This document shows, piece after piece, positions 28,896 to 49,290 of a DNA stretch of 64,000 nt. A program made the translations under genes and the position numbers. Location: IMG/VR virus record IMGVR_UViG_3300031576_000001, positions 258,634 through 322,633 of that record; one strand, given 5' to 3'. The notes beneath the pieces are model-generated. The model searched no databases and was not told where the DNA came from. It saw only the letters and a list, made by a program, of their open reading frames with translations. The first letter of the stretch is position 1. Every line of letters starts with the position of its first letter.

Positions 28896-29393
28896 ATGAC
28901 CCCTGACGCTGCCCTTGTCGAAGAGGCACGGACCACGACGGATGAGAAGCGCATCCGTGAGCTAGCCCTGGGATACGCGCTCTGCGTCCTTGCCCTCGCA
29001 GAGAACCCGGCGACGCCCAAAGACCTCTTGGGTGATTTTCTCCAGAATTGGCAGGGCTACTTCCACCAGGGTCACCTAGAGAGGGCGCTAGCCAAGAACC
29101 CCAACCTACCGGAGGACACGCTGTACGCCCTTCTCGTTCTGGGGTGGGTGGACACCCACAACCCCCTCTGGGCACTCTTGTTCTTGCTAGACCCCTCACT
29201 GGCGCGTTTTCACGAAAAGTTGCACTGGGCTCTCGGTACGAAAAGCATGGCAGACGCCCCCGAGGGCTTTGCCTACGCTGTCCTTGCTTCGCTGCCGGCG
29301 GGGCGCGTCCTGCGTATCTTGCGCCCAGCCTACTTGCGCTGGCGCGCTCGCCCTGACCTGGACGTGGCTCGTCGGTTTCCAGCGCTCACCTGA
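28896..29393 (+). CDS. leucine-rich variant (LRV)-like repeat protein
   Basis: LAENPATP and LAKNPNLP repeats; GGTGTACTGT 6 nt upstream. Confidence 0.65.
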   Translation: MTPDAALVEEARTTTDEKRIRELALGYALCVLALAENPATPKDLLGDFLQNWQGYFHQGHLERALAKNPNLPEDTLYALLVLGWVDTHNPLWALLFLLDPSLARFHEKLHWALGTKSMADAPEGFAYAVLASLPAGRVLRILRPAYLRWRARPDLDVARRFPALT

Positions 29394-29613
29394 ACCAGAG
29401 CACGGACGCCAAGAAGAAGCTAGCGAAGACCCACGAGAACAAGACGACGTACATAATGAACGCCAGCGCCAAAAGGTACCTGTTGAACGTATGCCAAGGG
29501 TGACGGCGCCACCAAAGACGAGCCAGTGTGCCTCTCAGTACCCCCCTACAAAGCCTCCCAAGAGGCGTAGGGTGTGCCTTGGTTTGTCTGGGTCCACGGT
29601 AGGCTTCGTGCAT
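29386..29613 (-). CDS. small membrane protein
   Basis: Hydrophobic C-terminal helix. Confidence 0.4.
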   Translation of the reverse strand: MHEAYRGPRQTKAHPTPLGRLCRGVLRGTLARLWWRRHPWHTFNRYLLALAFIMYVVLFSWVFASFFLASVLWFR

Positions 29614-29662
29614 GGTGCTCCTGGTACTGTAGGAAAAGCTCTGCTACCTTGAGTGTAACTGA

Positions 29663-30151
29663 ATGTTCACACCCAATCCTCAACAAGCTGCATTTTTCTC
29701 TGACCCTGACTGTCACGCTAGCCTTCGGTGGTTGCATAACGAAGAGGTGAGTAACCGCGGGACAGGACGCACCACGGCGTTGGCGCACCTCTACTTCCGG
29801 CAAGCCTTTCTCGCTCCCGGCGTCTCGGTCAAGGTCTATGACCACCACGACACAGAGAGGCACCACAAGGGCCTAGCAAGGTTTATCCTTGATTTCGTCA
29901 AGGGTAGAGACTTCGCGGGCTACTGGATAGCCGTTGACCTACACGCGCACACCCTCGCCGCACTAGTGTCCAGCGTGACGAAACCAATGACTGCACCTAG
30001 AGAGGCGACGACTTACATACACACGACTCCAGCGACGTACAGCTCCACAGGTGTAGTTACCGTAGGAGCAACGATAAGCTACGGGGCTACCCACACGTTT
30101 ACAACCATCCCCGTGAGCACTAACTTCGTACCGTTCACAATTACGCATTTA
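29663..30151 (+). CDS. hypothetical protein (ends at TTA; fused to the radical SAM ORF under table 11)
   Basis: RGTGRTT P-loop-like motif; the only in-frame TTA of the 562-aa ORF is at 30149, followed by a GGTGTA motif and a new ATG. Confidence 0.6.
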
Positions 30152-30181
30152 CGCTCGGTGTGGCGGTGTACCCTAGCAGTC

Positions 30182-31351
30182 ATGCGAAGCCTGACCTTGC
30201 AGCATGAGGGTTACACTGTGTACTCCTCTCAGTTTGACGAGAAGACGGGCGCCCTGGTTAGAGCCACGCGCGGTATCCCTCAGTCTTGGAAGCACGAGCG
30301 CGGCAAACTCGACCCCAAGGCTACCGAGGAGCACAAACTCTTCGCGAAGAGGTTCTCTACCCGGTTCTACGGGGGTCCGTGGTCCCCTGTCCCTGAGAGC
30401 GTAGACGTAAAGCTAACCTCGAAATGCAACTTCGGGGGGGAGGACGGGCCATGTGGGGAATACTGCTACATGCAGTCAGAAAAGCGCGGCACACACGCAC
30501 CCAAGGAGCTTATCGAGCAAGTCATCCTCGGCTTTGACCAGCCTCCTTACAGCCTAGCCTACGGAGGAGGTGAGCCAACGCACCATCCTGACTTCCCTTG
30601 GATACTCAGGAGAACCAAAGAGCTTGGCAGTGTGCCTAACTACACGACCAATGGCTCCTACCTCCCCCCTGGCGTGATTGAGGCTACCAATGAGGTTGTG
30701 GGGGGCGTCAGCATGACGTATCACCCCAAGACCGGGCGGGGTTGGTTTGAGAAGCGGTACGACGAGCTAAACAAAGCCCTCTCACCTCGCGTGCAACTCA
30801 ATATCCAGGTCATCGTGGACAAGGACATTGAGCAAACACTATCCGACGTGAAACGTCTTGACCCCTTCGGGACGCGCAAGCTACCGGACAACCGAAGGAG
30901 CCTGGTTCTCCTGGCTTATTACCCCGACGTGGGGCGAGCCAGCCTGGAGAGGCTTATCTTGCGGCAAACGTACCAGCGCCGGCTGCCAGCCATTCTCCAA
31001 GACCTGAGAGGTAACGGGTGGCGCGTAGCCTTCTCCGAGGGTCTCTTGCCTTACTTCCTCTCCCGCCCTGAGATCGGGGTGGATACCCGCATGGCCAGGC
31101 GAATGGAGGGCTTCTTCACCTGTTACGTGGACGACGCAGGCAGAATGAGCAAATCGTCGTTTGCCCCTCCCCAGGAAGACGCACCCACCGTGTACGATAC
31201 CATGGCACAAGACCTCTGGGATGGTCTGCACGCCTGGGGGACTACGCCTGACGGGGAGGCTTGCGAGTCGTGCCCTCACCAGAACCGATGCAGCACGCCC
31301 ACCACGTATAACTACAGCCTTTGTAGTTATGCCCCCCACAATCGGACCTGA
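30182..31351 (+). CDS. radical SAM protein with a C-terminal SPASM-like Cys cluster
   Basis: PESVDVKLTSKC-x8-C-x3-C, GGGEPT, NYTTNG, CESCPHQNRC. Confidence 0.88.
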   Translation: MRSLTLQHEGYTVYSSQFDEKTGALVRATRGIPQSWKHERGKLDPKATEEHKLFAKRFSTRFYGGPWSPVPESVDVKLTSKCNFGGEDGPCGEYCYMQSEKRGTHAPKELIEQVILGFDQPPYSLAYGGGEPTHHPDFPWILRRTKELGSVPNYTTNGSYLPPGVIEATNEVVGGVSMTYHPKTGRGWFEKRYDELNKALSPRVQLNIQVIVDKDIEQTLSDVKRLDPFGTRKLPDNRRSLVLLAYYPDVGRASLERLILRQTYQRRLPAILQDLRGNGWRVAFSEGLLPYFLSRPEIGVDTRMARRMEGFFTCYVDDAGRMSKSSFAPPQEDAPTVYDTMAQDLWDGLHAWGTTPDGEACESCPHQNRCSTPTTYNYSLCSYAPHNRT

Positions 31352-31357
31352 AGCCAG

Positions 31358-31765
31358 ATGACCCACGCAGAAGAACCCTTTGAACTGAGCGGAAACCTGG
31401 GTTTCATCACCAACTCCTCCTCGGTCATCTTTCACTTCCCTCTGAGCCTCTTGCAGCACCCCGACGTGGTAGCCGTGCTGACTGCCTTTGGCGTCACCGG
31501 GGGCGTGGTAGGTGACAACCTGTGGTCCAGAGACCACTGCGCCTCCCTCTTGGTCACACCCGAGCAGAAAGCAAAGGCCCTGGACGAGCTTCTCGGCAAC
31601 GAGTACAGCAAGCCCGAGGGCACTGAGGCGCTCCTCAACCAAGAGGGCGTGGTGCTCGTTTACGGGGATGAGTACGACTCTTTGCCCAGACTGCTCTGTA
31701 CTATGATGCGCGACCTTGCCGAGACCCTTGGCGTGCCCCTGATGGAAAGCGTAGGCTTCAACTGA
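31358..31765 (+). CDS. TNSSS-motif protein (radical SAM-associated)
   Basis: GFITNSSSVIF near the N-terminus; starts 6 nt after the radical SAM gene. Confidence 0.7.
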   Translation: MTHAEEPFELSGNLGFITNSSSVIFHFPLSLLQHPDVVAVLTAFGVTGGVVGDNLWSRDHCASLLVTPEQKAKALDELLGNEYSKPEGTEALLNQEGVVLVYGDEYDSLPRLLCTMMRDLAETLGVPLMESVGFN

Positions 31766-31767
31766 CG

Positions 31768-32070
31768 ATGACCACGCCCCCTCTCCTCGACTACGCCCAG
31801 CGCACAATACGGTGGTTGCGGGGTCACCCCTCCCCCAGCCAAGAGATTATCCTACGGGCGCTCTCAGGGGTCACGTCGGTTCAAGTGTCCGCCCTGGTCA
31901 AGCTGGTTGACTCTCAACTCTCCCCCGCTACCGTCCACCGCGAGCTTGACGGTTTGGAGCGCCTGGGGTGGGTCTCCGTTGACCGTAGCGGACTCCGAGC
32001 CGTGCTACGTGAACAAGGGATGCTCACTATAACCCCTCTGGGCAGATCCGCGCTAGCACTGAGAGGGTAG
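31768..32070 (+). CDS. winged-helix DNA-binding protein
   Basis: LSPATVHRELDGLERLGWV...ITPLGR. Confidence 0.65.
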   Translation: MTTPPLLDYAQRTIRWLRGHPSPSQEIILRALSGVTSVQVSALVKLVDSQLSPATVHRELDGLERLGWVSVDRSGLRAVLREQGMLTITPLGRSALALRG

Positions 32071-32087
32071 CGGTGTATGATGGGCTC

Positions 32088-33695
32088 ATGCCATCGTGGT
32101 TTAGCGAGAACACGTCAGACAAGCAGCACTACAATCCAGGGCAAGTTTACTCCAACTTGCAGACCCTCTTTGAGAAGGACTGCCTGCGAAACGGTCGCAC
32201 CTTCTCCGCTTGGGATCTGTCGGGTATACTCAGGGACGGAAGCTCCTTCGCTGCGTGGGAGAAGAAAATAAAGTCCCTGGGTTTTGGCCGAGCTAGCTTT
32301 TACCGCTCGGACTGGGCTGAACTCACACCGGAACCGGAGAGCGAAACCGTGGTCACCGTGGTCTACCTCGGGGACCACGGGGTGGTGCAATACCAGGGTC
32401 CGCTGACCGGCACCCTTCGAGCCGTCAACGTGATCGCTAACGTGAGCGCTACCGTGAGCCAAGACAAGACGCGCGAAGAGATGCTCACGTTTCTCAGGGC
32501 TAACCTGCAAGAGCGACCTTCCAAAGAGACGGGGGCGCCCTTCCTGGCGACGACCGACTCACGCGGGGGGTTGACCTTCGAGCAAAACCTGACCAGCGTG
32601 GGCTCTCCCTGGGTACCCACTAACTACAGCAAAGAGGTTCGGGCAGCTTACAGCGCCATGCTACCTGCCTTCGCCTCTAAGAACCCCTCGGGCAAGCTGG
32701 TCATCCTCAACGGAGCGCCTGGCACTGGCAAGTCCTTCCTGCTTCAGGCATTGCTGTACGACACCCGGGATCGGTTTTGCCATATCATCATGCCGCCCTA
32801 CATGATGCACAACATCACCGGACCCCAAACCATGTCCGCCCTGCTTCAGCACCGGAACGAAAACACGCGCAAGCGTACCGTCTTCTTCCTAGAGGACGCC
32901 GAGGACGCTCTCTTGGTACGTCAGGGCGATAACCACAGCGCGGTGAGCAACATCCTCAACCTGAGCGACGGTATGATGGGGAAGATCCTCGACATACGGA
33001 TCGTTGCCACCACCAACCGCAAGAAGGTTGAGCTAGACCCCGCCCTAATCCGTGATGAGCGCCTCTTGGCTCATATCTCCGTGGACCCCCTCTCCCCAGA
33101 GGAAGCCCGGGAAGCCTTTGATCACGTCTACCCAGAGAAGGCGGGTCAGTACACCCCGCACTACCCAACCAGCCTGGCTACCGTCTACAAGACAGCCAAG
33201 TCAATGGGGTGGACAGCACCAGAGCCCGCCGATAAGCCCGCTTCTCGCGGTGTGGTGACCCAGCGCCAGATCGACCGAGACGAGGCTAAGGTCCGGGGAC
33301 AATCCAAGGTAGGCGTTAGGGCACAACCGCGCAAACCCCACCTGGCAAGCGCCCCCAAGTTACCCCAGGCTAGGCGTCTCTTCGACAACGCAGCGGACCA
33401 CGCCCCACTCTATGCACCGGAGAAGGTAAAGGGCGATAACCGCCTCAGTGGGGTAGGAAGGCCAGAGGGTTCCCTCGTCGTCGGTCGCCCACCAGTTTGT
33501 GGTGTCGCTGCGTATGTCCGCCAGGATCTCCTCAAGCGTCTGCGGACTCTCGCTACTTACCCAGTGAAAGATGCCCCCCGTCTCTCGCTCAAACCGTTTG
33601 TGCTCAGCCGGGTCTGCAACGCGCAAGAAGGCGCCAGCAAGGACACGTTGAAATCGGGCACGCACAACGGGCGTCATCGGGTATCCCCTGGGTAG
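32088..33695 (+). CDS. AAA+ ATPase
   Basis: Walker A GAPGTGKS, Walker B FFLEDAE, TTN and LDPALIR; in-frame TTA at 33360 (proposed end 33362). Confidence 0.9.
   Translation: MPSWFSENTSDKQHYNPGQVYSNLQTLFEKDCLRNGRTFSAWDLSGILRDGSSFAAWEKKIKSLGFGRASFYRSDWAELTPEPESETVVTVVYLGDHGVVQYQGPLTGTLRAVNVIANVSATVSQDKTREEMLTFLRANLQERPSKETGAPFLATTDSRGGLTFEQNLTSVGSPWVPTNYSKEVRAAYSAMLPAFASKNPSGKLVILNGAPGTGKSFLLQALLYDTRDRFCHIIMPPYMMHNITGPQTMSALLQHRNENTRKRTVFFLEDAEDALLVRQGDNHSAVSNILNLSDGMMGKILDIRIVATTNRKKVELDPALIRDERLLAHISVDPLSPEEAREAFDHVYPEKAGQYTPHYPTSLATVYKTAKSMGWTAPEPADKPASRGVVTQRQIDRDEAKVRGQSKVGVRAQPRKPHLASAPKLPQARRLFDNAADHAPLYAPEKVKGDNRLSGVGRPEGSLVVGRPPVCGVAAYVRQDLLKRLRTLATYPVKDAPRLSLKPFVLSRVCNAQEGASKDTLKSGTHNGRHRVSPG
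33360..33677 (-). CDS. hypothetical protein
   Basis: ATGA-coupled to 33674-33895; its TAA pairs with the AAA gene's TTA. Confidence 0.65.
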   Translation of the reverse strand: MTPVVRARFQRVLAGAFLRVADPAEHKRFERETGGIFHWVSSESPQTLEEILADIRSDTTNWWATDDEGTLWPSYPTEAVIALYLLRCIEWGVVRCVVEETPSLG

Positions 33696-33895
33696 GTCGG
33701 GGGGCGTGCGCCATCGTTTACGTCAAGAGCCAGGTCGTCTAGAGCCTCATTGATGTAACCCTTGACCGTGGTAATCAAGGCAGACTCACCGATGCAGCCC
33801 GTGTACAGCTTGCTATTCATAATAGCCTCAGCTAGCCGCAGACGTTCTGCTTTAAGAGCCCGGTCAATGAGGGTCTGTACTTCTGCCTCGGTCAC
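33674..33895 (-). CDS. small hypothetical protein
   Basis: Coupled within the minus-strand operon. Confidence 0.55.
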   Translation of the reverse strand: MTEAEVQTLIDRALKAERLRLAEAIMNSKLYTGCIGESALITTVKGYINEALDDLALDVNDGARPPTYPGDTR

Positions 33896-34338
33896 TATAG
33901 CGCTCCACTCCTGGGTTTGGTTTTGCGCTCCCCCGTCAAGTAATCAAGAAGCGCGGTGCTCACCCTGTACCCCATAAGACAAGTAGCGGGCACCCTGAGA
34001 GCCCCTGAGAGGTTGTAGGCTGCGTGCCTGTGGTGCCCGTTCTCTAGAACCACGTCCAAGCGCCCGCCCAGGTAGGACACAAAAGTCACCTCGATAGGGT
34101 CCAGCACGACACCCTGACGCAGTTGGTCAAGGAAGAACCGTATGCGCCCGTGATGCCAGGCTCTCTCTGCCTCGGTCTGGTAGTCAGGGCGAAAAGCCTC
34201 TGGCTTGTATCGCTTGACCGGTATAGCGCCCTCAATCTGAGCCAAGGTTACGCCCCCAAAAGCGCAGAAGTTGCGCTTCGGTAGGCGAGTCGCAATGAGG
34301 TTGTGAACGAGGGCGCCTTTAGCTTTGAGGCGTAGCAC
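33895..34338 (-). CDS. ParB/Srx-like domain protein
   Basis: LDPIEV...LENGHHRHAAY. Confidence 0.65.
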   Translation of the reverse strand: MLRLKAKGALVHNLIATRLPKRNFCAFGGVTLAQIEGAIPVKRYKPEAFRPDYQTEAERAWHHGRIRFFLDQLRQGVVLDPIEVTFVSYLGGRLDVVLENGHHRHAAYNLSGALRVPATCLMGYRVSTALLDYLTGERKTKPRSGAL

Positions 34339-34344
34339 TCTGCC

Positions 34345-34788
34345 TCACTCCCCTCTCAGGTAACGCTCCAACCAAGCCCCCCGAAAGAGGTTCAGCGAGG
34401 CGCAAACCTGCAAACCCATGACTTCGGAGGGGAAAAACCACCCCGACCCCATGCTGGCGGTCAGATTCAGTTTCACAAACGGGGTGAGTCCTGTAACCCC
34501 GTAGTGCCGTATCCGGCAAGCCCGCCCAACGGTCGGTGGCACGAGATTGTGCTCCAAGAGGGGCTTTGGGTTGACTCCACCGTCCAGGGGGGACCAACCT
34601 AGCTCCTCAGTCAACTCACGCTTTAGTGCGGTGTAGTCGTCCTCACCGGGCTCAACCTTGCCGCCAGGGCACTCCCACTTACCCCCCAGTCGGTCGTCGG
34701 AGGGTCGCCTCTGCGTCAAGAAGATACGACCCCCCCAGGAGAGGATGGCACACACCACGTTGATGACCGGTCGGTTCGTCACTGGCAA
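34345..34788 (-). CDS. Nudix hydrolase (MutT-like)
   Basis: Nudix box GGKVEPGEDDYTALKRELTEELG. Confidence 0.92.
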   Translation of the reverse strand: MPVTNRPVINVVCAILSWGGRIFLTQRRPSDDRLGGKWECPGGKVEPGEDDYTALKRELTEELGWSPLDGGVNPKPLLEHNLVPPTVGRACRIRHYGVTGLTPFVKLNLTASMGSGWFFPSEVMGLQVCASLNLFRGAWLERYLRGE

Positions 34789-35378: not shown

Positions 35379-37108
35379 GTTGCTTTCCCTTGCGGAGCCA
35401 AGAGATACCATTGACGGTGGTCGGTACGGTACCGGGCCACTTGCACAACACAGCGAGGTACGGATGGGTCCGTGTACACATCCCGTAGCCCCTTGTAGGT
35501 CTGGCGGTCAACGATCACCGAGCCCTCGTACCAAGTGTCACCTTGGTAGTGCTCCCTCGGAGGAGCCTTACGGATCGACAACAAGGGCAGGTTGCTGGGG
35601 TGTACGAAGAGGCAAAAGTGCCCCTCTAGGGCGAGAATCTCTTCCATTGTGTGTGCTGTACGCAACCCCATCAGGGACGAGCCATCAGGGACGAGCAGAC
35701 TTACAGCCCGATTAAGACCAGCACGGAGCGAACCCAGCGCCTCTTGCGCCACAGAAGCACGCTCGATGACCTCCTCTGCCGTGAGCGAGTCAAGGTCAGC
35801 GTACCACACAACCTCCCCAAGAGGGCTTTGCTCAGGCGCCTCCTCACTGTTGAAGGCTTTCTCTACAGCCTCGGTTACCAGAATAACCTCAGCGGGCTCT
35901 GTTTCGGTGACGGGGGGAGGGGGAACCGTACTGTCAATCTCAAGAGCCGCTGCTGGCGGTACCCACGGCTTCGTGCGATTCAGGAAGGCCGAGCGAAGAA
36001 CCGTGGTCTCCCCAAGGAAACGCTCACCCTCGTCAAAGAAGGAAAGCCTGAGCCTGGGGAGCCGCTTGGTACCTGCATAGCCCAGAACCTTGAACTTGAG
36101 CGCCGGACTGGACCAGCTTGACACACCCCCCACTGCGGGCAGCTTGGAGCCAGGCAGTAGGACGTGACGGGAGCCCACCTCGGGCTGAACCCCCTCAGCC
36201 GGCGCACCTCCCAAGAGGCGAGCACGGTGGATCTTCGCGGGTTGAACCCTCTCCGTGGACTTCAGGAATTCCTTCAAGGCCCAGGTGTCTTTCGCGGGCC
36301 TATGTTCGCCCGGCTTACCCCAGGTGACCGTACCCTCAACGTGCTTGTCGTTCACGACCCGTACCTTGATCCGAGGGCTCCCATAATCATCCCACGTTCC
36401 ACCGTCCACACAAGCCAGCTTGCGACCGGGCTTGAGCCGGTACACCGCACCCACCACAGGAGTGTCGGCGCCCTTGGGCTCGGGCTTTGCTTTGACAGAC
36501 ACGGCTGGTGCCTCTACCGGAGCGCTCTTGTCTTGGGTTGGGGTGCTGGGCAAAGCCTCTGGCTTGGCAGGCGCAGCCACAACACGCTCGGTCGTCTTCA
36601 AGAACTCGTCCAGGGTGATGCAGTCAATCCGGTCAGGACGGTCTACGCTCACCTTGACGAGGGGCGTTCCGTCCTTGAAGGTCTCCACCGCTAGCACGGT
36701 AAACTGGCTTAGGTAGCTCCAGTGCCCCGAGTAGTACCCTGACGCGGCGTGCGACCAACACTTATTCTCCCTCACAGCGTACTTCGCTCCCACTACCACC
36801 CCGTGCGTGTCCACTGGGTCAGCCTGCGCCTGCGGGGGAGAGGGAGAGGGTTTCTCAACCATGGTAGCCAGGAAGTTCTTGAGGGACACCCTGTCCATTT
36901 GAGTTACCATATCCTCTCCGGTAACTTCAACAGTGAGCACCGTCTCACCCACCGAGAGAACACGGAACCGTCGCCCGGTGTCAGACCACCACCCCCCGTC
37001 CAGCATCCTCAACTGGCAACCCTGCTCAATAGCCCACACAGAGCCTACCGAAGGTACCGCGGGCGTCCCCGTTGCCTGAGAAACCCCTTCACTCTCTTGC
37101 TTCTTCAT
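35375..37108 (-). CDS. repeat-domain protein (four ~70-aa units plus a C-terminal domain)
   Basis: Units VG..Y/W...F.VL.V...FL..T; paralogous to 37144. Confidence 0.75.
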   Translation of the reverse strand: MKKQESEGVSQATGTPAVPSVGSVWAIEQGCQLRMLDGGWWSDTGRRFRVLSVGETVLTVEVTGEDMVTQMDRVSLKNFLATMVEKPSPSPPQAQADPVDTHGVVVGAKYAVRENKCWSHAASGYYSGHWSYLSQFTVLAVETFKDGTPLVKVSVDRPDRIDCITLDEFLKTTERVVAAPAKPEALPSTPTQDKSAPVEAPAVSVKAKPEPKGADTPVVGAVYRLKPGRKLACVDGGTWDDYGSPRIKVRVVNDKHVEGTVTWGKPGEHRPAKDTWALKEFLKSTERVQPAKIHRARLLGGAPAEGVQPEVGSRHVLLPGSKLPAVGGVSSWSSPALKFKVLGYAGTKRLPRLRLSFFDEGERFLGETTVLRSAFLNRTKPWVPPAAALEIDSTVPPPPVTETEPAEVILVTEAVEKAFNSEEAPEQSPLGEVVWYADLDSLTAEEVIERASVAQEALGSLRAGLNRAVSLLVPDGSSLMGLRTAHTMEEILALEGHFCLFVHPSNLPLLSIRKAPPREHYQGDTWYEGSVIVDRQTYKGLRDVYTDPSVPRCVVQVARYRTDHRQWYLLAPQGKAT

Positions 37109-37143
37109 CGTATGACTCCTGGCGATAAACTACACCGTGACAC

Positions 37144-38469
37144 TCAACCTACCACAAAGAGACACCACCGACCACCCTGGTACTGCTCCGTAAACGTGTG
37201 CGTGACACCTACCACGGCTATCCTGGGGGGCAATCGCGCGTCCGTATGAACGTACACCCAAGAGCGCATTCCCTTGAGCCGATGCCTGCCCACAGACTTC
37301 CACTCCCGGGCTGCACCCGCAACCACCCCCCCCTGCTTCTCAAAACTGGGCGCCAAAGCCGTCCAGTCCACAGGGTTGAAGACTACATGACCCCCAGCAG
37401 CCCCCGTCAAGTTGATAACCTCAGAGACCGTATGCGTCCGCGTCATCAGGTCCAGCCCCCCTGACGTGGGTGACAAGAGACCCACAGCCTCTCGGTACGA
37501 CGCCTCAAGAGACTGCAAAGCCTCTCGGGCTACGCCGGCTTGCTGTACAACCTCCTCCCGCGTCATGAGCCCCACGTCGCGCCACCACGGACGAGGAGCA
37601 TCCACGCTAGGCGCCACACCCAGCGAAACCCAGCCCCTAGAGACCCCACAGGCCAGGGAGGTAGGCTCAGCTTTGACTACGGAACACTCAGAAGTCGGCT
37701 CAGCGTGAGGCACACCCTTGAGGAGGTCCATGTGGCGGCGCAAGTCCTCGACCAAAAACACGTCCTCATCTTGCCCACCCCTGCAGATTGACGGACCCAG
37801 GACCGTAACACGGACCAAAGGCGTGCCGTCTCGGTACACACCAAGACAAACCACCCGAAAACCATCGGGAATATCCCCGTCCCGCCACATACCCGAAAAC
37901 GTCTCGGATGATGAGTGTGACTGCACACCACACCCCTCCCTCACCACGTAAACCTCCCCAACACGAGGAAAAAGAAGCACCGTCTCACGCAAGAAGTGCT
38001 CCCCCTCGAAAAACACGGCGGTCGCCGCCCCACCCACCAGCACCATCACGCCAAGCAGACCCCCTCCCTCCGCAACCTCAAGAGCCATCACCACCCCCCC
38101 GGGGTACGGCTTCGTCCTACGTAGCACGCCCACCGTCGCAAGAAGCCTCTCCCGCAAAGAGACAACCTCCTCTTTCGGGCTGCCTTGCATAGGCTCATCG
38201 CCCACAGGGACCGTCAGGTGCAAAAAGTCCTCCCGCAACACAACGTCGTACTCCTCATCACCGCCAATCCTGCAGACCCGGAGATGCACCACGTCCACCC
38301 CCGTTTTGAGAGTGCCCACCCCCGCCACCGTGAACCGAGTAGACTCAGACCCCCACGAGCACTGCCTAGGAGTCTCAGGGGCGCTCCTCAACACGCCCAC
38401 AACTACCCCGTCAGCACCTAGCCTCAACCGGTACACGCCGCCTAGCACCACCTTAGCCTTCTCGCTCAT
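37144..38469 (-). CDS. repeat-domain protein, paralogue of 35375
   Basis: Shared units; WWRDVGLMTREEVVQQAGVAREAL vs WYADLDSLTAEEVIERASVAQEAL; GGTGTAAGGT 7 nt upstream. Confidence 0.7.
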   Translation of the reverse strand: MSEKAKVVLGGVYRLRLGADGVVVGVLRSAPETPRQCSWGSESTRFTVAGVGTLKTGVDVVHLRVCRIGGDEEYDVVLREDFLHLTVPVGDEPMQGSPKEEVVSLRERLLATVGVLRRTKPYPGGVVMALEVAEGGGLLGVMVLVGGAATAVFFEGEHFLRETVLLFPRVGEVYVVREGCGVQSHSSSETFSGMWRDGDIPDGFRVVCLGVYRDGTPLVRVTVLGPSICRGGQDEDVFLVEDLRRHMDLLKGVPHAEPTSECSVVKAEPTSLACGVSRGWVSLGVAPSVDAPRPWWRDVGLMTREEVVQQAGVAREALQSLEASYREAVGLLSPTSGGLDLMTRTHTVSEVINLTGAAGGHVVFNPVDWTALAPSFEKQGGVVAGAAREWKSVGRHRLKGMRSWVYVHTDARLPPRIAVVGVTHTFTEQYQGGRWCLFVVG

Positions 38470-38533
38470 ACCCCCCACCTTACACCAAGACCGAGAAGCC
38501 CCACGCCCCCGTAAGCACAAAGAAGCCTACCCC

Positions 38534-39301
38534 CTACGGAGAGGAGACCCCCAACAGCCACCGGGGCGTCCCTTCACCCAGCAACCTGGAGTCCCTTAGC
38601 TCACCCCTGGCAAGCTCAAGATACCGCGGAGACACTACGCCAGCAAGCGTAGCACGCTCACTCAAACATGGCGTGACACTCTCTCGGGTACCCTTCAAGA
38701 GAAAGTGCTCAAGTTGGGAGCGAGCCGAAGACACCTCACTCATCGAACGAAACCACGTACCACGTACACGCTCTACCCGATGTTTCCTCTCCGCACACGC
38801 CTTCTGGTACCGACTCACCGCCCACCCACACGCACCTACACCACCCACCAAGAACACAAGAGACAACCACCACACCGAAACCCACCACCCCACCAATGGC
38901 GCAACCCCCACCCCAAACAAGCCCGCCACGAACACCAACCACGAAAGCCCACCAAACCCCACAGGAGACGCCTCCAAGTCAGCCAACTCTAGCTCACACG
39001 CCCTCCCCACCAATGCCAACGCTACGCACTCCCTCTCTACGTGCAAAACAACCCGGGTAGACTCCCCCTCCGTCAGCACCGAAGCCTGTAGCCCACGCGC
39101 AAACTCGACTCGGAGACCCCTCTCCTCTCGCTTACGCCACTCCTCATGCTTCTTCGCAATAACCTCCTCACCCCTCTCCAGAAGCCACCTCTTCCACAAC
39201 CGCCTCCTCAAAGAAGCATACCCCTCCAGGCTCAACCCGTAACCCCTCGCCTCCCTCCGCTCCTTGACCGTCAACGCTGACACCTTCAACTTGACCGACA
39301 T
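38534..39301 (-). CDS. membrane protein (two TM helices)
   Basis: Hydrophobic LSWLVFVAGLFG and WWLSLVFLVGG segments; GGTGTA motif at 39313. Confidence 0.6.
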   Translation of the reverse strand: MSVKLKVSALTVKERREARGYGLSLEGYASLRRRLWKRWLLERGEEVIAKKHEEWRKREERGLRVEFARGLQASVLTEGESTRVVLHVERECVALALVGRACELELADLEASPVGFGGLSWLVFVAGLFGVGVAPLVGWWVSVWWLSLVFLVGGVGACGWAVSRYQKACAERKHRVERVRGTWFRSMSEVSSARSQLEHFLLKGTRESVTPCLSERATLAGVVSPRYLELARGELRDSRLLGEGTPRWLLGVSSP

Positions 39302-39417
39302 AACCAGCCCCTTACACCCTCCCCCCAAGAGAAAAGGCTGAGCCAAAAAAGCACCCTCCCTAACCTACGCCTCACCTCAGCCCCAGCCCCCAGCCTAAAG
39401 GGTGTATACCCACACCC

Positions 39418-40032
39418 GTGACACCAAGAGCCCTCCTCGACTGCGACGGAGTAGTCGCCAACTTCACCCACCACGTCGGGCACAGAGCCCACCAACTCGC
39501 TGGTCTGCCTACACCCACAGAGACACCTCCCTTCAAGAACTACAAATTCCTCCCCGAAGTCGCCGCCCTCACCGGTATACCCGAAGAGGAGGTCACCAAG
39601 GCGATCAGCTCCCCAGGCTTCTGCGAAACCATACCCCCCTTCCCAGGCGCTAGCGCCTTCGTTGACAACCTCAGCCAAACCCACGAAGTCATCATACTTA
39701 CCTCTCCCTGGTACTCACCCACATGGGTCAGCGAACGCTACGCCTGGCTCGCTAACCACCTCAATATACCCAGAAAAAATGTCATCTTCGCCCAACGAAA
39801 AGAACTCGTTCAGGGGGATATACTGATCGATGACCGCCTGATACACCTGACCCGATGGGTTTCAACTCAGTTGGCAGCCAATTCGCGAAAAGATTTCGCA
39901 GGGGTCTTGTATAACCCCACCCCCGCGGGAGTACCCCTCCCCACTCTGAAGGGTCTCTCCCTCTGTGCTACTTACAACGACATCTTGTCTGTAGCCAGGG
40001 CACAGGCAGGGGGGAGGGATTGGAACCTCTAA
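39418..40032 (+). CDS. HAD-family 5'(3')-deoxyribonucleotidase (NT5C-like)
   Basis: LLDCDGVVANF, ILTSP, K and GDILIDD motifs. Confidence 0.88.
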   Translation: MTPRALLDCDGVVANFTHHVGHRAHQLAGLPTPTETPPFKNYKFLPEVAALTGIPEEEVTKAISSPGFCETIPPFPGASAFVDNLSQTHEVIILTSPWYSPTWVSERYAWLANHLNIPRKNVIFAQRKELVQGDILIDDRLIHLTRWVSTQLAANSRKDFAGVLYNPTPAGVPLPTLKGLSLCATYNDILSVARAQAGGRDWNL

Positions 40033-40079
40033 ACCTAGCCTGACCCAATTGGGTGTGGAGTTAGGCTCTTCAACCCACC

Positions 40080-41114
40080 TCAGAGCTTCTTGCAGCCTGC
40101 GACGTACCACTGGCGAGCCGCGTCGGATACGGCTTTCTGAGCCGTTTTCGCGTCTAGCCCGGAACAAGCTAGCTCAGCGTTGCACTCCTTGAGCACGTCC
40201 GCCGTCAACCAAGCCAGAAAGACACCGGTTTTCTTGGGGTCGAAGCTACCCCCACAGACCACAGAAAGCCCCTGCTCCAGGCGGGCGCCCGTGACGACCA
40301 AAGAGGCGAAATCGGCGGCGTTTCGGGTTACCGTGGCGCTGGCTTGGGCTGGCGCCGTCCTGGTGACCGCGCAAGCGTGGTGCTTCTCGCCCTTGGCTTT
40401 GAAGCAGAGGTTGGAAAAGCGCTTATAATCGCTGCCCAGAGAGGGCTCGTCAGCCTCAGCCCCCGAGGGCACGGGGTAGAAGACCAGCCCTTCGCCCGTG
40501 CCCTCTACGCCAAAGGTGTTGCGTACCCAGGGGTCGCACTCCTCGACAGCGAGGACGTGCTGGTTGATCCGGTCTAGCGTGGGCTGTAGAGCTTCGTCGG
40601 AAGCCGCCCAGTTCACCATGTAGGCTTCGCCGTCCTGGTACCAGGGGAGCACGTAGCAGCCGGGGATGACCTGGGTCAGCCGGGAGAGGGTCTCTGGATC
40701 GTCGAGGAAGTCGATAACCCCAGGGTGGTCAACGAGGCGGGCAGCAAAGACGGCAAAGACCTTCGCTTTGAGGAGGTTGACGGCGACGCCCTTCTGAATG
40801 CCGGGTCCACACCACTCCCCGAAGAGGACCAGGGCGCCCGCCAGAGGAGCCAGCTTGGCTATCGTTGCCTGGCGCTCGTAGACCCACCTAGCAAAGCCCG
40901 CATTGTCCGAGTCCAGGGAGAGCACGCTGGTGCGGGACAGGGCAGTTACCCCCTCTTGGCTGATCTTTATGCCGGCGTTGGTGCCATGGAGCTTCACCTT
41001 GGCGCGGTAGCTCACGGTTGACGCCCCCTGGTCAAGAAGCTCCGGGTAGAGGGTCAGCTTGCGCCTGGCATTGTGAAAGTTGTCAATCTCGGTCCACTTG
41101 ACGTGCTCTGTCAT
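40080..41114 (-). CDS. RNA ligase, Rnl2 family
   Basis: KLHGTN (motif I), FGEWCGPGIQKG, GEGLVF, FKAKGEKH. Confidence 0.85.
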   Translation of the reverse strand: MTEHVKWTEIDNFHNARRKLTLYPELLDQGASTVSYRAKVKLHGTNAGIKISQEGVTALSRTSVLSLDSDNAGFARWVYERQATIAKLAPLAGALVLFGEWCGPGIQKGVAVNLLKAKVFAVFAARLVDHPGVIDFLDDPETLSRLTQVIPGCYVLPWYQDGEAYMVNWAASDEALQPTLDRINQHVLAVEECDPWVRNTFGVEGTGEGLVFYPVPSGAEADEPSLGSDYKRFSNLCFKAKGEKHHACAVTRTAPAQASATVTRNAADFASLVVTGARLEQGLSVVCGGSFDPKKTGVFLAWLTADVLKECNAELACSGLDAKTAQKAVSDAARQWYVAGCKKL

Positions 41115-41173
41115 GCCCGAGAGGGTACACCGCCCGGCGCTCAACCTCTCAGGGGGACCACCACCCCCTTTCA

Positions 41174-41216
41174 AAAACCCTCACGCTGATACGGCAAACC
41201 CAAAGAAATTGAAAGC
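41174..41216. repeat. 43-bp inverted repeat, left arm
   Basis: Reverse complement of 42113-42155 with 1 mismatch. Confidence 0.9.
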
Positions 41217-41870
41217 CAGGAGACCCTCTCGTCCGTGACGCGATGTGTCATGATGACCTCGGGGCACTCGGTACACAAAAGGCACGTTTGGGGTCGTGTT
41301 TTGTGCCTCGTGCCACCCCCCGGATTTACCGATGTTTTTGTGGTCCAGCCCCTAGGGGGAGACTCCATGCGGAGAGGGGTCCAAATTATGGAACCTCCAT
41401 ACACTTGATCGGCCTTTTTGCCAGGGGTCAGGAGTGACACCCCCTCTCTGCTCAATCGTGCTACGCCTAAGTGTGCTCAACTGGAGTCCTCGCCGGGGTC
41501 CAATTCGGATGTATTTCAAGAAACCCCGATCAATAGAGGGGTGTCATGTTTGACCTGAGAGGCGTGTCTAGGTAGCACGCATGACCCCCTACGCGCACAA
41601 TCGTGCCACGGTATGCCCTACGTGTAGGGTCATGTGTGGTCACGGTTGGCAGGGGGGGTGCGTCAATTTCTGAAGCTAGGAGGGGCTCATGCTGTGTGTG
41701 GAAGCTCCCACCTTGGGGGGCTTCTCTGCGCCTACGCTGGCGAGCCCCCTACCCCCTTGTGATTTGCGAATGCAGGAGGCGCCTCTTTGAGGCAAGGCGT
41801 AGCCCCAATTCATTTGGAAATTCGCGCCATTACCCTAGCCGGGTCTGCCCAGGGGCGGGAAGGGGTGAGT

Positions 41871-42049
41871 TCAGTACACACACAAATGAGGATCGGCTAG
41901 GAGCACCGGTATAGGATTTGAATTTTTTACCCGGTGCCCTGTCTCAGTACACACACAAATGAGGATCGGCTAGGAGCACCGGTATAGGATTTGAATTTTT
42001 TACCCGGTGCCCTGTCTCAGTACACACACAAATGAGGATCGGCTAGGAG
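41871..42049. repeat. 73-bp perfect tandem repeat (about 2.45 copies)
   Basis: Units start at 41871, 41944 and 42017. Confidence 0.95.
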
Positions 42050-42112
42050 GGTGGGGTGTGTTTTGAATTTTGGGTTGGAGGCTGTTTTCGATTACAGTGT
42101 GGCTGTAGCTGC

Positions 42113-42155
42113 GCTTTCAATTTCTTTGGGTTTGCCGTATCAGTGTGAGGGTTTT
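42113..42155. repeat. 43-bp inverted repeat, right arm
   Basis: Reverse complement of 41174-41216. Confidence 0.9.
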
Positions 42156-42305
42156 CGTGAGGGGGTTTCGGGTGAGACGGGGGGTCTCTATTTTCTACCC
42201 CGTTTTCTTTTTGGGTGGGTGTGGGGGTGGCTTCCTGAATTTTGGGTGGCAGAGAACGTAGCCTCGGGTGTTTTTTCTGCGAGGAGTGGTGTACCTAGTG
42301 TGCCC

Positions 42306-43133
42306 ATGGGATGTTTTCCTCTAGCGGGTCAAGACGAGTCCTTGAGCGGTCCTTACGTACCGTGTGTGTACGTGGCTTCCAGGCTACAGTACGCTTCCAT
42401 GTGGCGATCTTACCGAGAGGGTTGGGCTACGTCGGTAAGGGTGACCTCACGGTGGCTCGACGTAGTGGGCGAGGTGTCTGACAAGGGTGGGTTGTGGCAG
42501 GGCCTTATGGCGGACATAGTGAGGTCGGACGTTTTGCTAGCCTACGGGGAGGCTGGCGAGGTGTGGCAGGGTGCTCTTGTCGAGGTGGGCGCCGCCCTGG
42601 CTCTAGGTAAGCCAGTGCTTGTTGTGGGTGCAGGGGTGAACAGCTTTTGGAGTCACCCGTTGGTTACGCGCTTCGATACGGTAGAGGCTGCCATGGCTTC
42701 GCTTGGGGTACAGCGTCCCCTCTCACCTGCGCCTATTACGGAGTCTGTGAGGGTGATGGTGATGTCCGAGGTACGGCACGTTGGCATGTGGAGGGAGTGC
42801 GTAGCTTCTCAGCCTCCAGGGGTGAGCATAGTCTCTAGGTGGCTGGATGATGTGGCGGTGGGGGACACGGTACGGATGTGGCTTGAGTACCTGGAGGACA
42901 CGAAGCGCGCTCAAGCGGTCATTCTCTATGGTGGCTTTGATGATGACGCGCTATGGGAGCGCCAGCTAGTCAGGGTAGCGGTTCACGTAGCGCTGCTAGC
43001 CAAGAAGCCTGTCTACGTGGTGGGTTCTGGCTCGGGCTCAGAAAATCTAGGCATAGGGGCTTCGCCTCTTGTGCGTCTGTGTGCTTCGGTCGAGGAGGCT
43101 TTTCGGTTGGCTGCCGTTCTGTCTTCCCCTTAA
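42306..43133 (+). CDS. tandem nucleoside 2-deoxyribosyltransferase-like protein
   Basis: VYVAS...TSRW...DIVRSDVLL...GALVEVGAALALGKPV, followed by a degenerate second copy. Confidence 0.75.
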   Translation: MGCFPLAGQDESLSGPYVPCVYVASRLQYASMWRSYREGWATSVRVTSRWLDVVGEVSDKGGLWQGLMADIVRSDVLLAYGEAGEVWQGALVEVGAALALGKPVLVVGAGVNSFWSHPLVTRFDTVEAAMASLGVQRPLSPAPITESVRVMVMSEVRHVGMWRECVASQPPGVSIVSRWLDDVAVGDTVRMWLEYLEDTKRAQAVILYGGFDDDALWERQLVRVAVHVALLAKKPVYVVGSGSGSENLGIGASPLVRLCASVEEAFRLAAVLSSP

Positions 43134-43828
43134 AAGGAAGAACCCCGTAGCCCTTGGGGGTGCCTACGGGGCGCTCGATACCTCTTTGCGTAGAGGCTTG
43201 GTAAGCGAACGATGCTCCGAGAGCGGGGTCTCGTGGGTGTGGTCAGGGTGTATTTGTCACCGCCGCCTGTGGGGGGGCGGGGTGCGTTAGTATTGGTAGC
43301 CCTGTTGATGAGCGCCTGTAGAGCCGCTGTCGAGAGCACGTTACTTTTGGAGACGGGGCTGAGTGTGGTAGGCGTAGCCTTGTATAGGTCGGGGTTATTG
43401 AGGAACCCGTGACCGTCGAGGTCGCCGTCGAGACCAAAGAGGAAGTTGAGTGCAGTCGCCGCGAGAGATCCGCTACCCGTGAGGTTATTGCCGGTACCGA
43501 ACGTGCTCACCAAATTCAGTGGGCTCGTTAGCGTACCGCTCCCTGTTGTGGACCCTGTGTAAGCTAGGGCAAGATTAAGCCCTGTACCGTTGGCGAAGAG
43601 GGTGCCTATACCCGTGGCCGCGCCATTTGCGACGGCGACTAGGTTTAGGTTGACCGCTGTAACTGTGCCCACGCCGGTCGTATTGCCTATGTAGGCGAGG
43701 GCAAGGTTAAGGGGGGCTGACAGAGAACCAGCGCCCGTGGTGCTACCGGCGTAGGTAAGGTCTAGGTTCAAGAAAGCAGAGAGGTCACCATTACCATCTA
43801 GATTACCGTCAAGAAGTTGGTCAGCCAT
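43130..43828 (-). CDS. virion structural protein with G/T/N-rich repeats
   Basis: ~20-aa repeats NLALAY.G.TTG.G.L; CTTATCC motif upstream; in-frame TTA at 43202. Confidence 0.65.
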   Translation of the reverse strand: MADQLLDGNLDGNGDLSAFLNLDLTYAGSTTGAGSLSAPLNLALAYIGNTTGVGTVTAVNLNLVAVANGAATGIGTLFANGTGLNLALAYTGSTTGSGTLTSPLNLVSTFGTGNNLTGSGSLAATALNFLFGLDGDLDGHGFLNNPDLYKATPTTLSPVSKSNVLSTAALQALINRATNTNAPRPPTGGGDKYTLTTPTRPRSRSIVRLPSLYAKRYRAPRRHPQGLRGSSF

Positions 43829-43927
43829 GGGTCAGTACCGTGCGTGCCTCTCAGTGGGTAGCGTAGGGGATAAGAGGCAACCCTCAAAAGGGTTGCTCTG
43901 CTCTGCTCTGCGGTGTAAGGGGAAAGG

Positions 43928-44242
43928 GTGACAACCAAGAAGACGAAAACCACGGAAGCTCAGCGCACCCACGAAGAGGGGGAGTTTGGTACGATTGAAT
44001 GGCGTGCGCAGTTGGAGGGTTCTGCGTTGCACCACAATTGGCACGATCCCTTCGAGGTGATGCTACGCAGGTTGAATCAAGCCACCTCGACCCCCGCTTA
44101 CATCAAGGACTCTGCGATACACGTCCACGATACGCTTCTGCTCGCTCAGTCCATAGCCGTCTCCCTTTTCGGGTGGGACTGGAAAGAACACGTCATGGAC
44201 GTGTACGACCGTATCCAGAAGCACCTCTACCAAAGGGAGTAA
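43928..44242 (+). CDS. hypothetical protein
   Basis: GGTGTA motif at 43912; followed by a hairpin. Confidence 0.6.
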   Translation: MTTKKTKTTEAQRTHEEGEFGTIEWRAQLEGSALHHNWHDPFEVMLRRLNQATSTPAYIKDSAIHVHDTLLLAQSIAVSLFGWDWKEHVMDVYDRIQKHLYQRE

Positions 44243-49030: not shown

Positions 49031-49290
49031 GGTAACAATCTCTCGTGTTTGGGTGCCTGGCGGAAGGGGTACACCGAGAGAGCCACGGGGAGGACCACGC
49101 TTGCGGGGGAGCTAGAAGAAGGCTTTCATGGTGAGCGTAGGGTAACCAGGGTTAGAGGTTGGTACAAGGGGTGCGCCCTGCGGGAGTTGAACCCGCGCAA
49201 AAGAACTTTAGAGGCTCTGTACTCTACCTTTGAGTTAAAGGCGCGTTGTGTGGGCTTCTGCTCGATCTCACGAGGTAGCCCGTTGTGAAG

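What the first reader, a model, noticed from the sequence alone, without database searches (positions are those of the whole stretch)
30182..31765. Radical SAM with an atypical C-x8-C-x3-C motif paired with a TNSSS-motif protein
The canonical CxxxCxxC is replaced by CNFGGEDGPCGEYC, and a SPASM-like Cys cluster is present. The next gene carries GFITNSSS, a motif I recall recurring beside phage radical SAM genes without a known function. Inference: an enzyme/substrate pair for post-translational modification of the Ser-rich motif.
Basis: partly seen in the sequence, partly recalled or inferred. Interest (0 to 1): 0.6.

Follow-up and report, generated by a model that had tools for sequence, protein, structure and literature searches.

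The report
Phage radical SAM enzyme with NSS-tagged partner
A jumbo phage from a cave metagenome carries a divergent radical SAM enzyme next to a small protein with an invariant Asn-Ser-Ser tag near its start; this pairing, sometimes as one fused gene, recurs in large phages and appears undescribed, and the tag most likely enters the enzyme's active site to be modified.

Summary
Window 30182-31351 (+) encodes a radical SAM (rSAM) protein whose cluster motif is C-x8-C-x3-C. 108 of 120 relatives have the canonical C-x3-C-x2-C. Window 31358-31765 (+) encodes a 135-aa protein carrying GFITNSSS.

The recalled pairing is real. In 80 related viral loci, 76 carry an xNSS(S/T) module beside or fused to the rSAM. 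It appears as a separate downstream gene, as 1-4 tandem upstream paralogs, or as an N-terminal fusion. Three C-terminal fusions also exist. Cultured phages (Salmonella Arash, Rhodothermus RM378, Microcystis Ma-LMM01, Thermus phiYS40, Lak, Vibrio D479) have it too.

Only about 25 N-terminal residues of the partner are shared between groups. No Pfam, PHROG or PDB relative was found for it.

Co-folding gave ipSAE 0.84 (best control 0.00). It placed partner residues 5-20 on the rSAM N-terminal hairpin and across the barrel top.

Best reading is an rSAM maturase acting on the NSS segment of protein substrates (confidence about 0.5). The chemistry is unknown. The main rival is an obligate subunit that completes the active site.

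The "SPASM-like" four-Cys tail exists only in the window's subgroup, and no SPASM family was matched. I found no paper describing the pair. I rate it a new variant of a known kind, interest about 0.65.

The parts
30182..31351 (+). Radical SAM gene (389 aa from M174 of the open frame 29663-31351). It belongs to a phage-restricted family near phrog_16999 'Fe-S oxidoreductase'.
   Evidence: Homolog alignments start at this Met. phrog_16999 E 5e-12. Pfam Radical_SAM scores only 17.5 bits, below its 29.5 cut-off, while relatives score 38-51 bits. The window deviates at 11 of 102 highly conserved family positions.
30245..30274 (+). N-terminal hairpin strand of the rSAM (residues 22-31, TGALVRATRG; family pattern Y.S.F...G..VR). 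It is the predicted docking strand for the partner's N-terminal strand.
   Evidence: Lowest-error contacts in the co-fold are rSAM 23-30 with partner 8-16. The hairpin pattern is present in all three architectural groups.
30425..30466 (+). Cluster-binding loop CNFGGEDGPCGEYC (C82, C91, C95 counted from M174), an atypical C-x8-C-x3-C.
   Evidence: The sequence is identical in a second assembly.
30563..30577 (+). GGGEP motif (GGE-type SAM-binding motif; G128-G130 and P132 invariant, E131 nearly invariant).
   Evidence: Residues 124, 126 and 128 are in the predicted interface.
31262..31324 (+). C-terminal C-x2-C-x5-C-x10-C cluster (C361, C364, C370, C381 from M174). It is a possible auxiliary Fe-S or metal site and exists only in the window's subgroup.
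   Evidence: Invariant in A1 and A4. Absent from the fused and short groups.
31358..31765 (+). Partner gene (135 aa): an N-terminal strand-GFITNSSS-strand module followed by a small alpha/beta domain.
   Evidence: AF2 model pLDDT 81, pTM 0.72, with residues 12-19 below 50. No Pfam, PHROG, NCBIfam or PADLOC family. No PDB fold match.
31409..31423 (+). T18-N19-S20-S21-S22 motif. N-S-S is the family-wide invariant core.
   Evidence: Residues 5-20 form the confident interface with the rSAM.
31664..31672 (+). G103-D104-E105 after a beta-strand, a second conserved patch of the ortholog group.
   Evidence: Similar-looking GGNDN and SDNS patches occur in other groups, but hhalign does not align them.
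29663..30181 (+). Stop-free in-frame stretch upstream of the rSAM start (173 codons). It is probably not part of the enzyme.
   Evidence: No homolog has it. No Pfam hit.

Best explanation
The two genes form an enzyme/protein-substrate pair.

The enzyme is a divergent, phage-restricted radical SAM enzyme. It binds the N-terminal strand of the partner by beta-strand addition to its own N-terminal hairpin. It threads the following (T)-N-S-S-(S/T) segment over the SAM/[4Fe-4S] site. There the 5'-deoxyadenosyl radical abstracts a hydrogen from a residue of the N-S-S core, and the partner is modified.

The roughly 25-residue module acts as a portable tag. It is attached to different C-terminal domains, in 1-5 paralogs per phage, or is fused to the enzyme itself.

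Shown here: the pairing, the fusions, the restriction of shared homology to the tag, and the predicted docking.

Inferred: that the docked segment is the substrate.

Unknown: the product. Most family members have no auxiliary-cluster cysteines. The family-wide reaction therefore probably needs only the rSAM cluster, which fits hydrogen abstraction leading to epimerisation, rearrangement, crosslink or cleavage better than an anSME-type two-electron oxidation. The window's subgroup, with its extra four-Cys tail, may have added a redox step.
For: - Neighbourhood. 71 of 80 viral loci have TNSS[ST] on the rSAM strand in an N-terminal context. Five more have a profile match with T replaced by C, Y or N. 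The total is 76 of 80.
- Chance controls. Strand control is 123 hits against 3. The own genome has 1 hit in 289,725 aa.
- Fusions in both orders. There are 29 N-terminal fusions by motif, plus 4 more found by profile. C-terminal fusions are P0008 (a real table-11 ORF), P0082 and P0175.
- Among ortholog loci only these two genes are conserved neighbours. The nearest relative, which also has a variant Cys loop, keeps the pair.
- Six cultured phage lineages show the same pairing.
- Profile-profile homology between partner groups covers only the N-terminal 24 columns (probability 90%, E 1.5e-6).
- In the AF2 monomer the motif start is the low-confidence part, while the rest of the domain is confident.
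- Co-fold with 2x[4Fe-4S] and SAM. ipSAE was 0.84, 0.81 and 0.85, with best control 0.00. The runs agree in at least 82% of contacts. Partner pLDDT was 47-52. In the tool's calibration the mark was reached by 58 of 80 solved complexes and 2 of 110 mismatched pairs, and those counts hold only roughly here. The interface is partner 5-20 with rSAM 22-31 and barrel-top residues 73, 75, 124-128, 151-155, 174-177, 205-209, 237-244, 285, 304-306 and 313.
- The closest solved relatives by sequence are protein- or peptide-modifying SPASM/twitch-type rSAMs (SuiB, PqqE, SkfB, YydG), besides GDGT-MAS, MoaA and viperin.
Against: - No modification has been observed.
- The co-fold is a model's own confidence.
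- S21 and S22 are not in the confident interface list.
- Fused forms would be single-turnover if they act in cis.
- The fused-group N-domain has further invariant polar residues (DHQS, GGNDN, K, R, H). These look like an active site of its own, which would also fit a subunit or enzyme role.
- Four of 80 loci lack the module, including three close orthologs with a different downstream gene.
- The window's enzyme deviates at 11 of 102 conserved positions, including the second cluster Cys column and C173. It could be impaired.
Confidence: 0.5

Rival explanations
1. Obligate two-part enzyme. The NSS module is not modified. It is a subunit or adaptor whose N-terminal segment plugs into the barrel and completes or gates the active site for another substrate, such as a nucleotide, a nucleic acid or a small molecule. 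Paralogs would give different specificities.
For: - Fusions in both orders are typical of subunits.
- Ser/Thr/Asn-rich loops often bind phosphates (general knowledge).
- The fused N-domain has extra invariant polar residues: DHQS, GGNDN, K51 and R7.
- The loci often sit among DNA/RNA-metabolism genes. Examples are polymerases and RNA ligase in Arash, primase and a resolvase in Ma-LMM01, poly(A) polymerase and a helicase in RM378, methyltransferases in L082, and NUDIX and RNA ligase in the window.
- The co-fold supports binding but cannot tell a substrate from a subunit.
Against: - Shared homology between partner groups is limited to about 25 N-terminal residues on otherwise unrelated domains. 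That suits a tag better than a conserved subunit fold.
- The segment lies across the barrel top, where substrates bind.
- Up to 4-5 tandem paralogs per single rSAM resembles one maturase serving many substrates.
Confidence: 0.25
2. Activase/radical-enzyme pair, analogous to glycyl-radical systems. The rSAM abstracts one hydrogen from the tag and leaves a protein-based radical or a radical-derived cofactor. The partner domain then uses it catalytically.
For: - Most family members need no auxiliary cluster, as is true of PFL-type activases (general knowledge).
- A partner loop or segment is predicted to enter the barrel.
- The fused N-domain has active-site-like invariant residues.
Against: - No conserved Gly in an RVxG-like context. 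The Gly before the motif is missing in the short-paralog group.
- The partner domains are small and unrelated to one another.
- No fold likeness to glycyl-radical enzymes.
Confidence: 0.1
3. The window's own copy is a decaying or functionally shifted enzyme. The 6-residue insertion moves the second cluster Cys and widens the Cys2-Cys3 spacing to x3, so the [4Fe-4S]/SAM site may no longer form.
For: - It is the only x8/x3 case among 120 members.
- 11 of 102 conserved positions are changed, against 2 in typical members.
- The Pfam score is below its cut-off.
Against: - The frame is intact, and three Cys, GGGEP and 45 invariant positions are kept.
- The nearest relative has an independent x6/x3 loop with the same number of deviations and keeps its partner gene. 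A small lineage therefore lives with this loop.
- Non-canonical spacings work in other rSAM enzymes such as ThiC, HmdB and QueE (general knowledge).
Confidence: 0.15
4. Linked genes without direct contact, for example a regulator, a chaperone or an unrelated co-transcribed gene.
For: Neighbourhood alone does not prove interaction.
Against: Repeated independent fusions and a co-fold far above its controls.
Confidence: 0.05

Closest known systems
Anaerobic sulfatase-maturating enzymes (AtsB/anSME) with Ser- or Cys-type sulfatases
   Same: A radical SAM enzyme acts on a whole protein rather than a short peptide. The target is a short invariant Ser-containing motif near the N-terminus. One maturase can serve several paralogous substrates. 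The window's subgroup has a C-terminal Cys-rich extension.
   Different: The substrate motif is N-S-S(S/T), not (C/S)-x-P-x-R. The partner has no alkaline-phosphatase-type fold. No SPASM family was matched. Most of the family has no auxiliary-cluster Cys. No sequence match to anSME appeared among PDB hits.
RiPP-modifying SPASM/twitch radical SAM enzymes (SuiB, PqqE, SkfB, YydG)
   Same: These are among the closest solved sequences, with E from 4e-5 to 0.05. The predicted recognition is by beta-strand addition of the substrate's N-terminal strand to a small N-terminal domain of the enzyme, followed by insertion of the next residues into the barrel. Tandem substrate paralogs are present.
   Different: No PqqD-like RRE was detected. 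The substrate is a folded protein of 100-260 aa carrying the tag at its start. The matches cover only the first ~85-140 profile positions. The family is restricted to phages.
phrog_16999 'Fe-S oxidoreductase' (e.g. Ma-LMM01 gp128, RM378 p108)
   Same: The same wider phage rSAM family. The window scores E 5e-12 and fused relatives score 1e-33 to 1e-37. These cultured phages also carry an xTNSSSxHS protein nearby.
   Different: The window's subgroup is longer. It has about 70 extra N-terminal residues counted from the conserved start, plus the four-Cys C-terminal tail. It matches only profile positions 9-97 of 288. The family name is an annotation and no function has been tested.
Glycyl-radical enzyme activases
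   Same: An rSAM enzyme that acts on a segment of a partner protein inserted into its barrel. No auxiliary cluster is needed in most members.
   Different: There is no Gly-radical motif, no GRE fold and no sequence match.

Membership tests
Radical SAM superfamily (PF04055) | Three-Cys motif C-x3-C-x2-C binding the [4Fe-4S] cluster | tested here: not met
   The window has C-x8-C-x3-C. Three Cys are present, and 108 of 120 relatives are canonical. The deviation is in spacing, not in the presence of ligands.
Radical SAM superfamily (PF04055) | GGE-type SAM-binding motif after beta-2 | tested here: met
   GGGEP at residues 128-132: G128-G130 and P132 invariant, E131 nearly invariant in 73 sequences.
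Radical SAM superfamily (PF04055) | Pfam score at or above the gathering cut-off (29.5 bits) | tested here: not met
   The window scores 17.5 bits, E 0.005. Fused relatives score 38-51 bits. Homology to them is secure, E 1e-83 to 1e-116.
Radical SAM superfamily (PF04055) | Reductive cleavage of SAM to the 5'-deoxyadenosyl radical | not testable with these tools
   This needs biochemistry.
SPASM/twitch subfamily | C-terminal C-x9-15-G-x4-C ... C-x2-C-x5-C-x3-C ... C motif set, or a SPASM family match | tested here: not met
   No SPASM family was among the window protein's Pfam matches at E <= 0.1. The tail is C-x2-C-x5-C-x10-C. The upstream element reads C-x5-G-x4-S, so the second Cys is replaced. 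The tail is absent in the fused and short groups.
anSME (AtsB-type) | Substrate motif (C/S)-x-P-x-R in a sulfatase-fold protein | tested here: not met
   The partner motif is TNSSS. There is no sulfatase or alkaline-phosphatase fold match.
RiPP rSAM maturase with RRE | PqqD-like RRE domain and a short precursor peptide | tested here: not met
   No RRE or PqqD family hit. The partner is a folded 135-aa protein. The predicted strand-addition docking is only an analogy.
Viperin / pVip | Full-length match above the family cut-off | tested here: not met
   NF038283 scores 23.8 bits against a cut-off of 180. PADLOC pVip scores 27.8 bits over the first 100 core residues only.
Glycyl-radical activase / GRE pair | Conserved Gly in an RVxG-like loop of the partner | tested here: not met
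   No invariant Gly across partner groups.
SGNH/GDSL hydrolase (considered for the partner because of GFATNSSS and GGNDN) | Flavodoxin-like SGNH fold with blocks I, II, III and V in that order | tested here: not met
   Best PDB matches are Z 3.0 and E 0.11, and none is an SGNH enzyme. The DH pair lies between the Ser and ND blocks. No Pfam hit.
Phage 'NSS-tag + rSAM' pair (the family proposed here) | rSAM with an N-terminal Y..F...G..hR hairpin and a C-terminal SS[FY] motif, next to or fused with a protein that starts with strand-x-N-S-S-(S/T)-strand | tested here: met
   Window.

The most novel reading that the evidence does not exclude
A phage-wide protein-tagging chemistry that has not been described. 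A dedicated radical SAM enzyme installs a new post-translational modification on an invariant Asn-Ser-Ser tag. The tag is carried by several unrelated small phage proteins, or by the enzyme itself, and the modification creates a functional group or crosslink needed by large phages during infection.
Probability: 0.35. Interest if true: 0.8.

Novelty: new variant of a known kind. Interest (0 to 1): 0.65.

Why it matters
Radical SAM enzymes that modify whole proteins are few, and each has revealed new chemistry (formylglycine, glycyl radicals, thioether and C-C crosslinks). Here a conserved, almost purely viral pair has an invariant three-residue target, three gene architectures and no annotation for the partner.

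The pair occurs in large phages from cave, gut (Lak), freshwater (Microcystis phages), hot-spring (RM378, phiYS40) and sewage (Salmonella phage Arash) settings. It gives a concrete, cheap experiment: co-expression followed by mass spectrometry. Cultured model phages and thermostable orthologs are available.

The window's C-x8-C-x3-C loop, and the x6/x3 loop of its relative, would also extend the known range of cluster-binding spacings if the enzyme proves active.

Tried and rejected
- DNA search of 29000-34000 against cultured phages found no match.
- Pfam, PHROGs, NCBIfam and PADLOC scans of the partner and of 36 relatives found no family.
- Fold searches of two confident partner models found nothing.
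  - Window protein: pLDDT 81. Fused-group N-domain: pLDDT 82, pTM 0.79.
  - Foldseek PDB best E was 0.2 and 0.11. VIA wide best Z was 4.5 and 3.0.
  - The ESM Atlas returned only viral hypothetical proteins and viral rSAM fusions above TM 0.4.
- SGNH-hydrolase, Ntn/pyruvoyl-type self-processing, N-glycosylation sequon (N-S-S) and flavodoxin readings of the motif were considered. None has fold or motif-order support, and none explains the rSAM. They remain speculation.
- The viperin reading was rejected because the scores are far below the cut-offs.
- The N-terminal 173 codons of the open frame are not part of the conserved protein.
- wHTH (31768-32070) and AAA+ ATPase (32073-33695) are not conserved neighbours.
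- Literature searches found nothing on the pair. Terms tried were TNSSS and related strings, radical SAM with jumbo or huge phages, Fe-S oxidoreductase with Ma-LMM01, and phage Arash.
- Genome-wide TAG recoding, suggested by the CTA tRNA, is not supported.
- Reads: only contigs from the source sample were available, so there are no raw reads and no RNA data.
Full report
**Setting.** The window is the last 64 kb of a 322.6-kb IMG/VR virus record (CheckV completeness 68%), so it is a jumbo phage. GC is about 59%. The only sequencing runs that hold the stretch are from a cave metagenome. A Logan contig of 48,987 nt from that sample matches 29600-32100 with no differences. That is a second assembler, but not an independent sample.

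**The observation.**
- The open frame runs 29663-31351 (562 aa).
- A word search found 225 relatives. The 120 listed are mostly 360-460 aa and cover only the C-terminal 69% of the frame.
- The 173 upstream codons have no homolog and no Pfam hit.
- The cluster motif reads CNFGGEDGPCGEYC, that is C-x8-C-x3-C, at nt 30425-30466.
- Among 120 relatives, 108 are C-x3-C-x2-C, two are x7/x2, the nearest relative P0003 is x6/x3, and the window alone is x8/x3.
- The family is therefore canonical, and the odd loop marks one small divergent lineage.
- The window and P0003 each deviate at 11 of 102 highly conserved positions. Typical members deviate at 2.
- GGGEP and 45 invariant positions are kept.
- The C-terminal C-x2-C-x5-C-x10-C is invariant in this subgroup. 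No SPASM family was among the window protein's Pfam matches at E <= 0.1.
- The usual upstream C...G-x4-C element has Ser in place of the second Cys.
- Pfam Radical_SAM is sub-threshold for the window at 17.5 bits. It is clear in relatives. phrog_16999 'Fe-S oxidoreductase' matches at 5e-12.
- By sequence, the closest solved proteins are GDGT-MAS, SuiB, PqqE, SkfB, viperins, MoaA and YydG. The matches cover only the first ~85-140 profile positions, the N-terminal part of the protein.

**The partner.**
- Window 31358-31765 encodes 135 aa with GFITNSSS at residues 15-22.
- It has no Pfam, PHROG, NCBIfam or PADLOC family.
- The word search found three relatives.
- A profile search of 1.84 billion representatives found 78, mostly 120-140 aa. 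Two of them are C-terminal fusions to the rSAM.
- AF2 gives a confident small alpha/beta domain (pLDDT 81, pTM 0.72). Its N-terminal residues 12-19 are below pLDDT 50.
- Foldseek and VIA found no PDB relative: best E 0.2 and best Z 4.5.

**The pairing.**
- A scan of viral contigs with the rSAM alignment returned 80 loci.
- 71 carry TNSS[ST] about 11-30 residues from the start of a protein on the rSAM strand.
- Five more carry the same module with T replaced by C, Y or N. The total is 76 of 80.
- Architectures:
  - N-terminal fusion in 29 loci, plus 4 more found by profile.
  - 1-4 tandem small paralogs upstream in 31 loci.
  - One small gene downstream in 8 loci, including the window's orthologs.
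  - Copies on both sides in 1 locus.
- Chance controls: 123 motif hits on the rSAM strand against 3 on the other strand, and one hit in the whole 322.6-kb genome.
- Among ortholog loci only these two genes are conserved neighbours.
- P0008 is a true table-11 ORF that fuses the rSAM to the partner.
- The nearest relative P0003 keeps the partner gene directly downstream.
- Cultured or named phages show the same pairing:
  - Salmonella phage Arash gp146c, a fusion annotated 'methyltransferase'.
  - Rhodothermus RM378 p108 with p106.
  - Microcystis Ma-LMM01 gp128 with gp130.
  - Thermus phiYS40 161 with 162.
  - Lak-A1, with five tandem paralogs.
  - Vibrio phage D479.
- In 185,579 prokaryotic species genomes the fused-type motif found 13 loci, all on MAG contigs. 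In 11 the motif sits in the same ORF as the rSAM core; one more has the rSAM in the adjacent ORF.
- The ESM Atlas returns only viral clusters above TM 0.4. The system is essentially viral.

**What is shared.**
- Across 36 diverse partners only T, N, S, S and the start Met are invariant. With the C/Y/N variants the invariant core is N-S-S.
- A profile-profile comparison of the window's group with the fused-group N-domain aligns only the first 24 columns, strand-GFxTNSSS-strand (probability 90%, E 1.5e-6).
- The module is thus a portable tag of about 25 residues on otherwise unrelated domains.
- The fused N-domain (pLDDT 82, pTM 0.79) also has no PDB relative: Z 3.0 and E 0.11.
- On the enzyme side, all groups share an N-terminal hairpin (Y..F...G..hR) and a C-terminal SS[FY] motif.
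- Only the window's group has the four-Cys tail.

**How the two sit together.**
- The co-fold used the rSAM (73-row alignment), two [4Fe-4S] clusters, SAM and the partner (62-row alignment).
- ipSAE was 0.84, 0.81 and 0.85. The best of three controls was 0.00.
- At least 82% of contacts are shared between runs. Partner pLDDT was 47-52.
- In the tool's calibration, 58 of 80 solved complexes and 2 of 110 mismatched pairs reached the mark. The tool notes these counts hold only roughly here, because my own alignments and small molecules were used.
- Partner residues 8-16 pair with rSAM residues 23-30.
- Partner 5-20 also touches residues at the C-terminal ends of the barrel strands and the GGE region: 73, 75, 124-128, 151-155, 174-177, 205-209, 237-244, 285, 304-306 and 313.
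- That is where rSAM substrates bind. The result supports binding and a substrate-like pose. It does not show chemistry, and I could not measure distances.

**Interpretation.**
- The best-supported reading is an rSAM maturase that recognises the tag by strand addition and attacks a residue of N-S-S (confidence about 0.5).
- Most members lack auxiliary-cluster Cys. An anSME-type oxidation is therefore unlikely to be the family-wide reaction, so the product is left open.
- The chief rival (0.25) is that the tag is a structural plug of a two-part enzyme acting on something else.
  - The extra invariant polar residues of the fused N-domain fit this reading.
  - So does the frequent DNA/RNA-metabolism neighbourhood.
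- A glycyl-radical-like activase relation (0.1) and decay of this particular copy (0.15, independent of the other readings) are also open.

**Novelty.** No paper in the library mentions the motif with radical SAM, or this family. Pfam and PHROGs hold no model of the partner. The enzyme class is known. The partner family, the tag and the pairing appear undescribed. I rate it a new variant of a known kind, interest 0.65.

Noticed in passing
window 49170-49244 (-): A tRNA with anticodon CTA, an amber-suppressor type that ARAGORN labels 'Pyl'. TAG still ends 121 of 385 long ORFs in the genome, so there is no sign of genome-wide TAG recoding.
   Followed up: partly
window 29663-30181 (+): A stop-free in-frame stretch of 173 codons runs into the rSAM start. 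Its first ~100 residues look protein-like (GTGRTT, P-loop-like) and the rest is low-complexity. It has no homolog and no Pfam hit. It may be a small upstream gene whose end is unclear.
   Followed up: partly
P0011, P0068, P0099, P0105, P0112 (relatives): Several rSAM homologs are 725-787 aa and carry intein or LAGLIDADG domains (PF14528, PF14890). Inteins have therefore invaded this phage rSAM family.
   Followed up: no
window 34345-34788 (-); L102 5193-5636: A NUDIX hydrolase gene lies about 3 kb downstream of the pair in the window, and about 0.5 kb downstream of it in the nearest relative's locus. That locus is on a 205-kb contig binned in a 'Lysinibacter sp.' MAG (GCA_040400085.1). This is either a clue to an actinobacterial host or a mis-binned phage.
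   Followed up: partly
L005 7261-7647, L007 7390-7821, L009 7663-8157: A subclade of close rSAM orthologs, with a long insertion before the Cys motif, has a different downstream small ORF without the NSS motif. The L005 and L007 ORFs look alike and begin ...HSFxSLDE...; L009's is different. They may be a replaced or much-diverged partner.
   Followed up: partly
window 31768-32070 (+) and 32073-33695 (+): A winged-helix protein (weak IclR/MarR-type hits) and a 540-aa AAA+ ATPase follow the pair. Neither is a conserved neighbour in related loci.
   Followed up: yes
window 40080-41174 (-); 42051-43133 (+): An RNA ligase domain (PF09414, 2.7e-12) and a weak nucleoside 2-deoxyribosyltransferase hit. 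Nine other large ORFs (362-1296 aa) have no Pfam family.
   Followed up: no
window 36000-44000: GC skew swings strongly, from -0.39 at 38-40 kb to +0.24 at 42-44 kb. This coincides with a change of coding strand.
   Followed up: no
L083 3440-4870 (Salmonella phage Arash gp146c): This gene is annotated 'methyltransferase'. It is in fact an NSS-tag domain fused to the rSAM, with 34% identity to a fused metagenomic member over 96% of its length. The phage's paper does not discuss it.
   Followed up: partly
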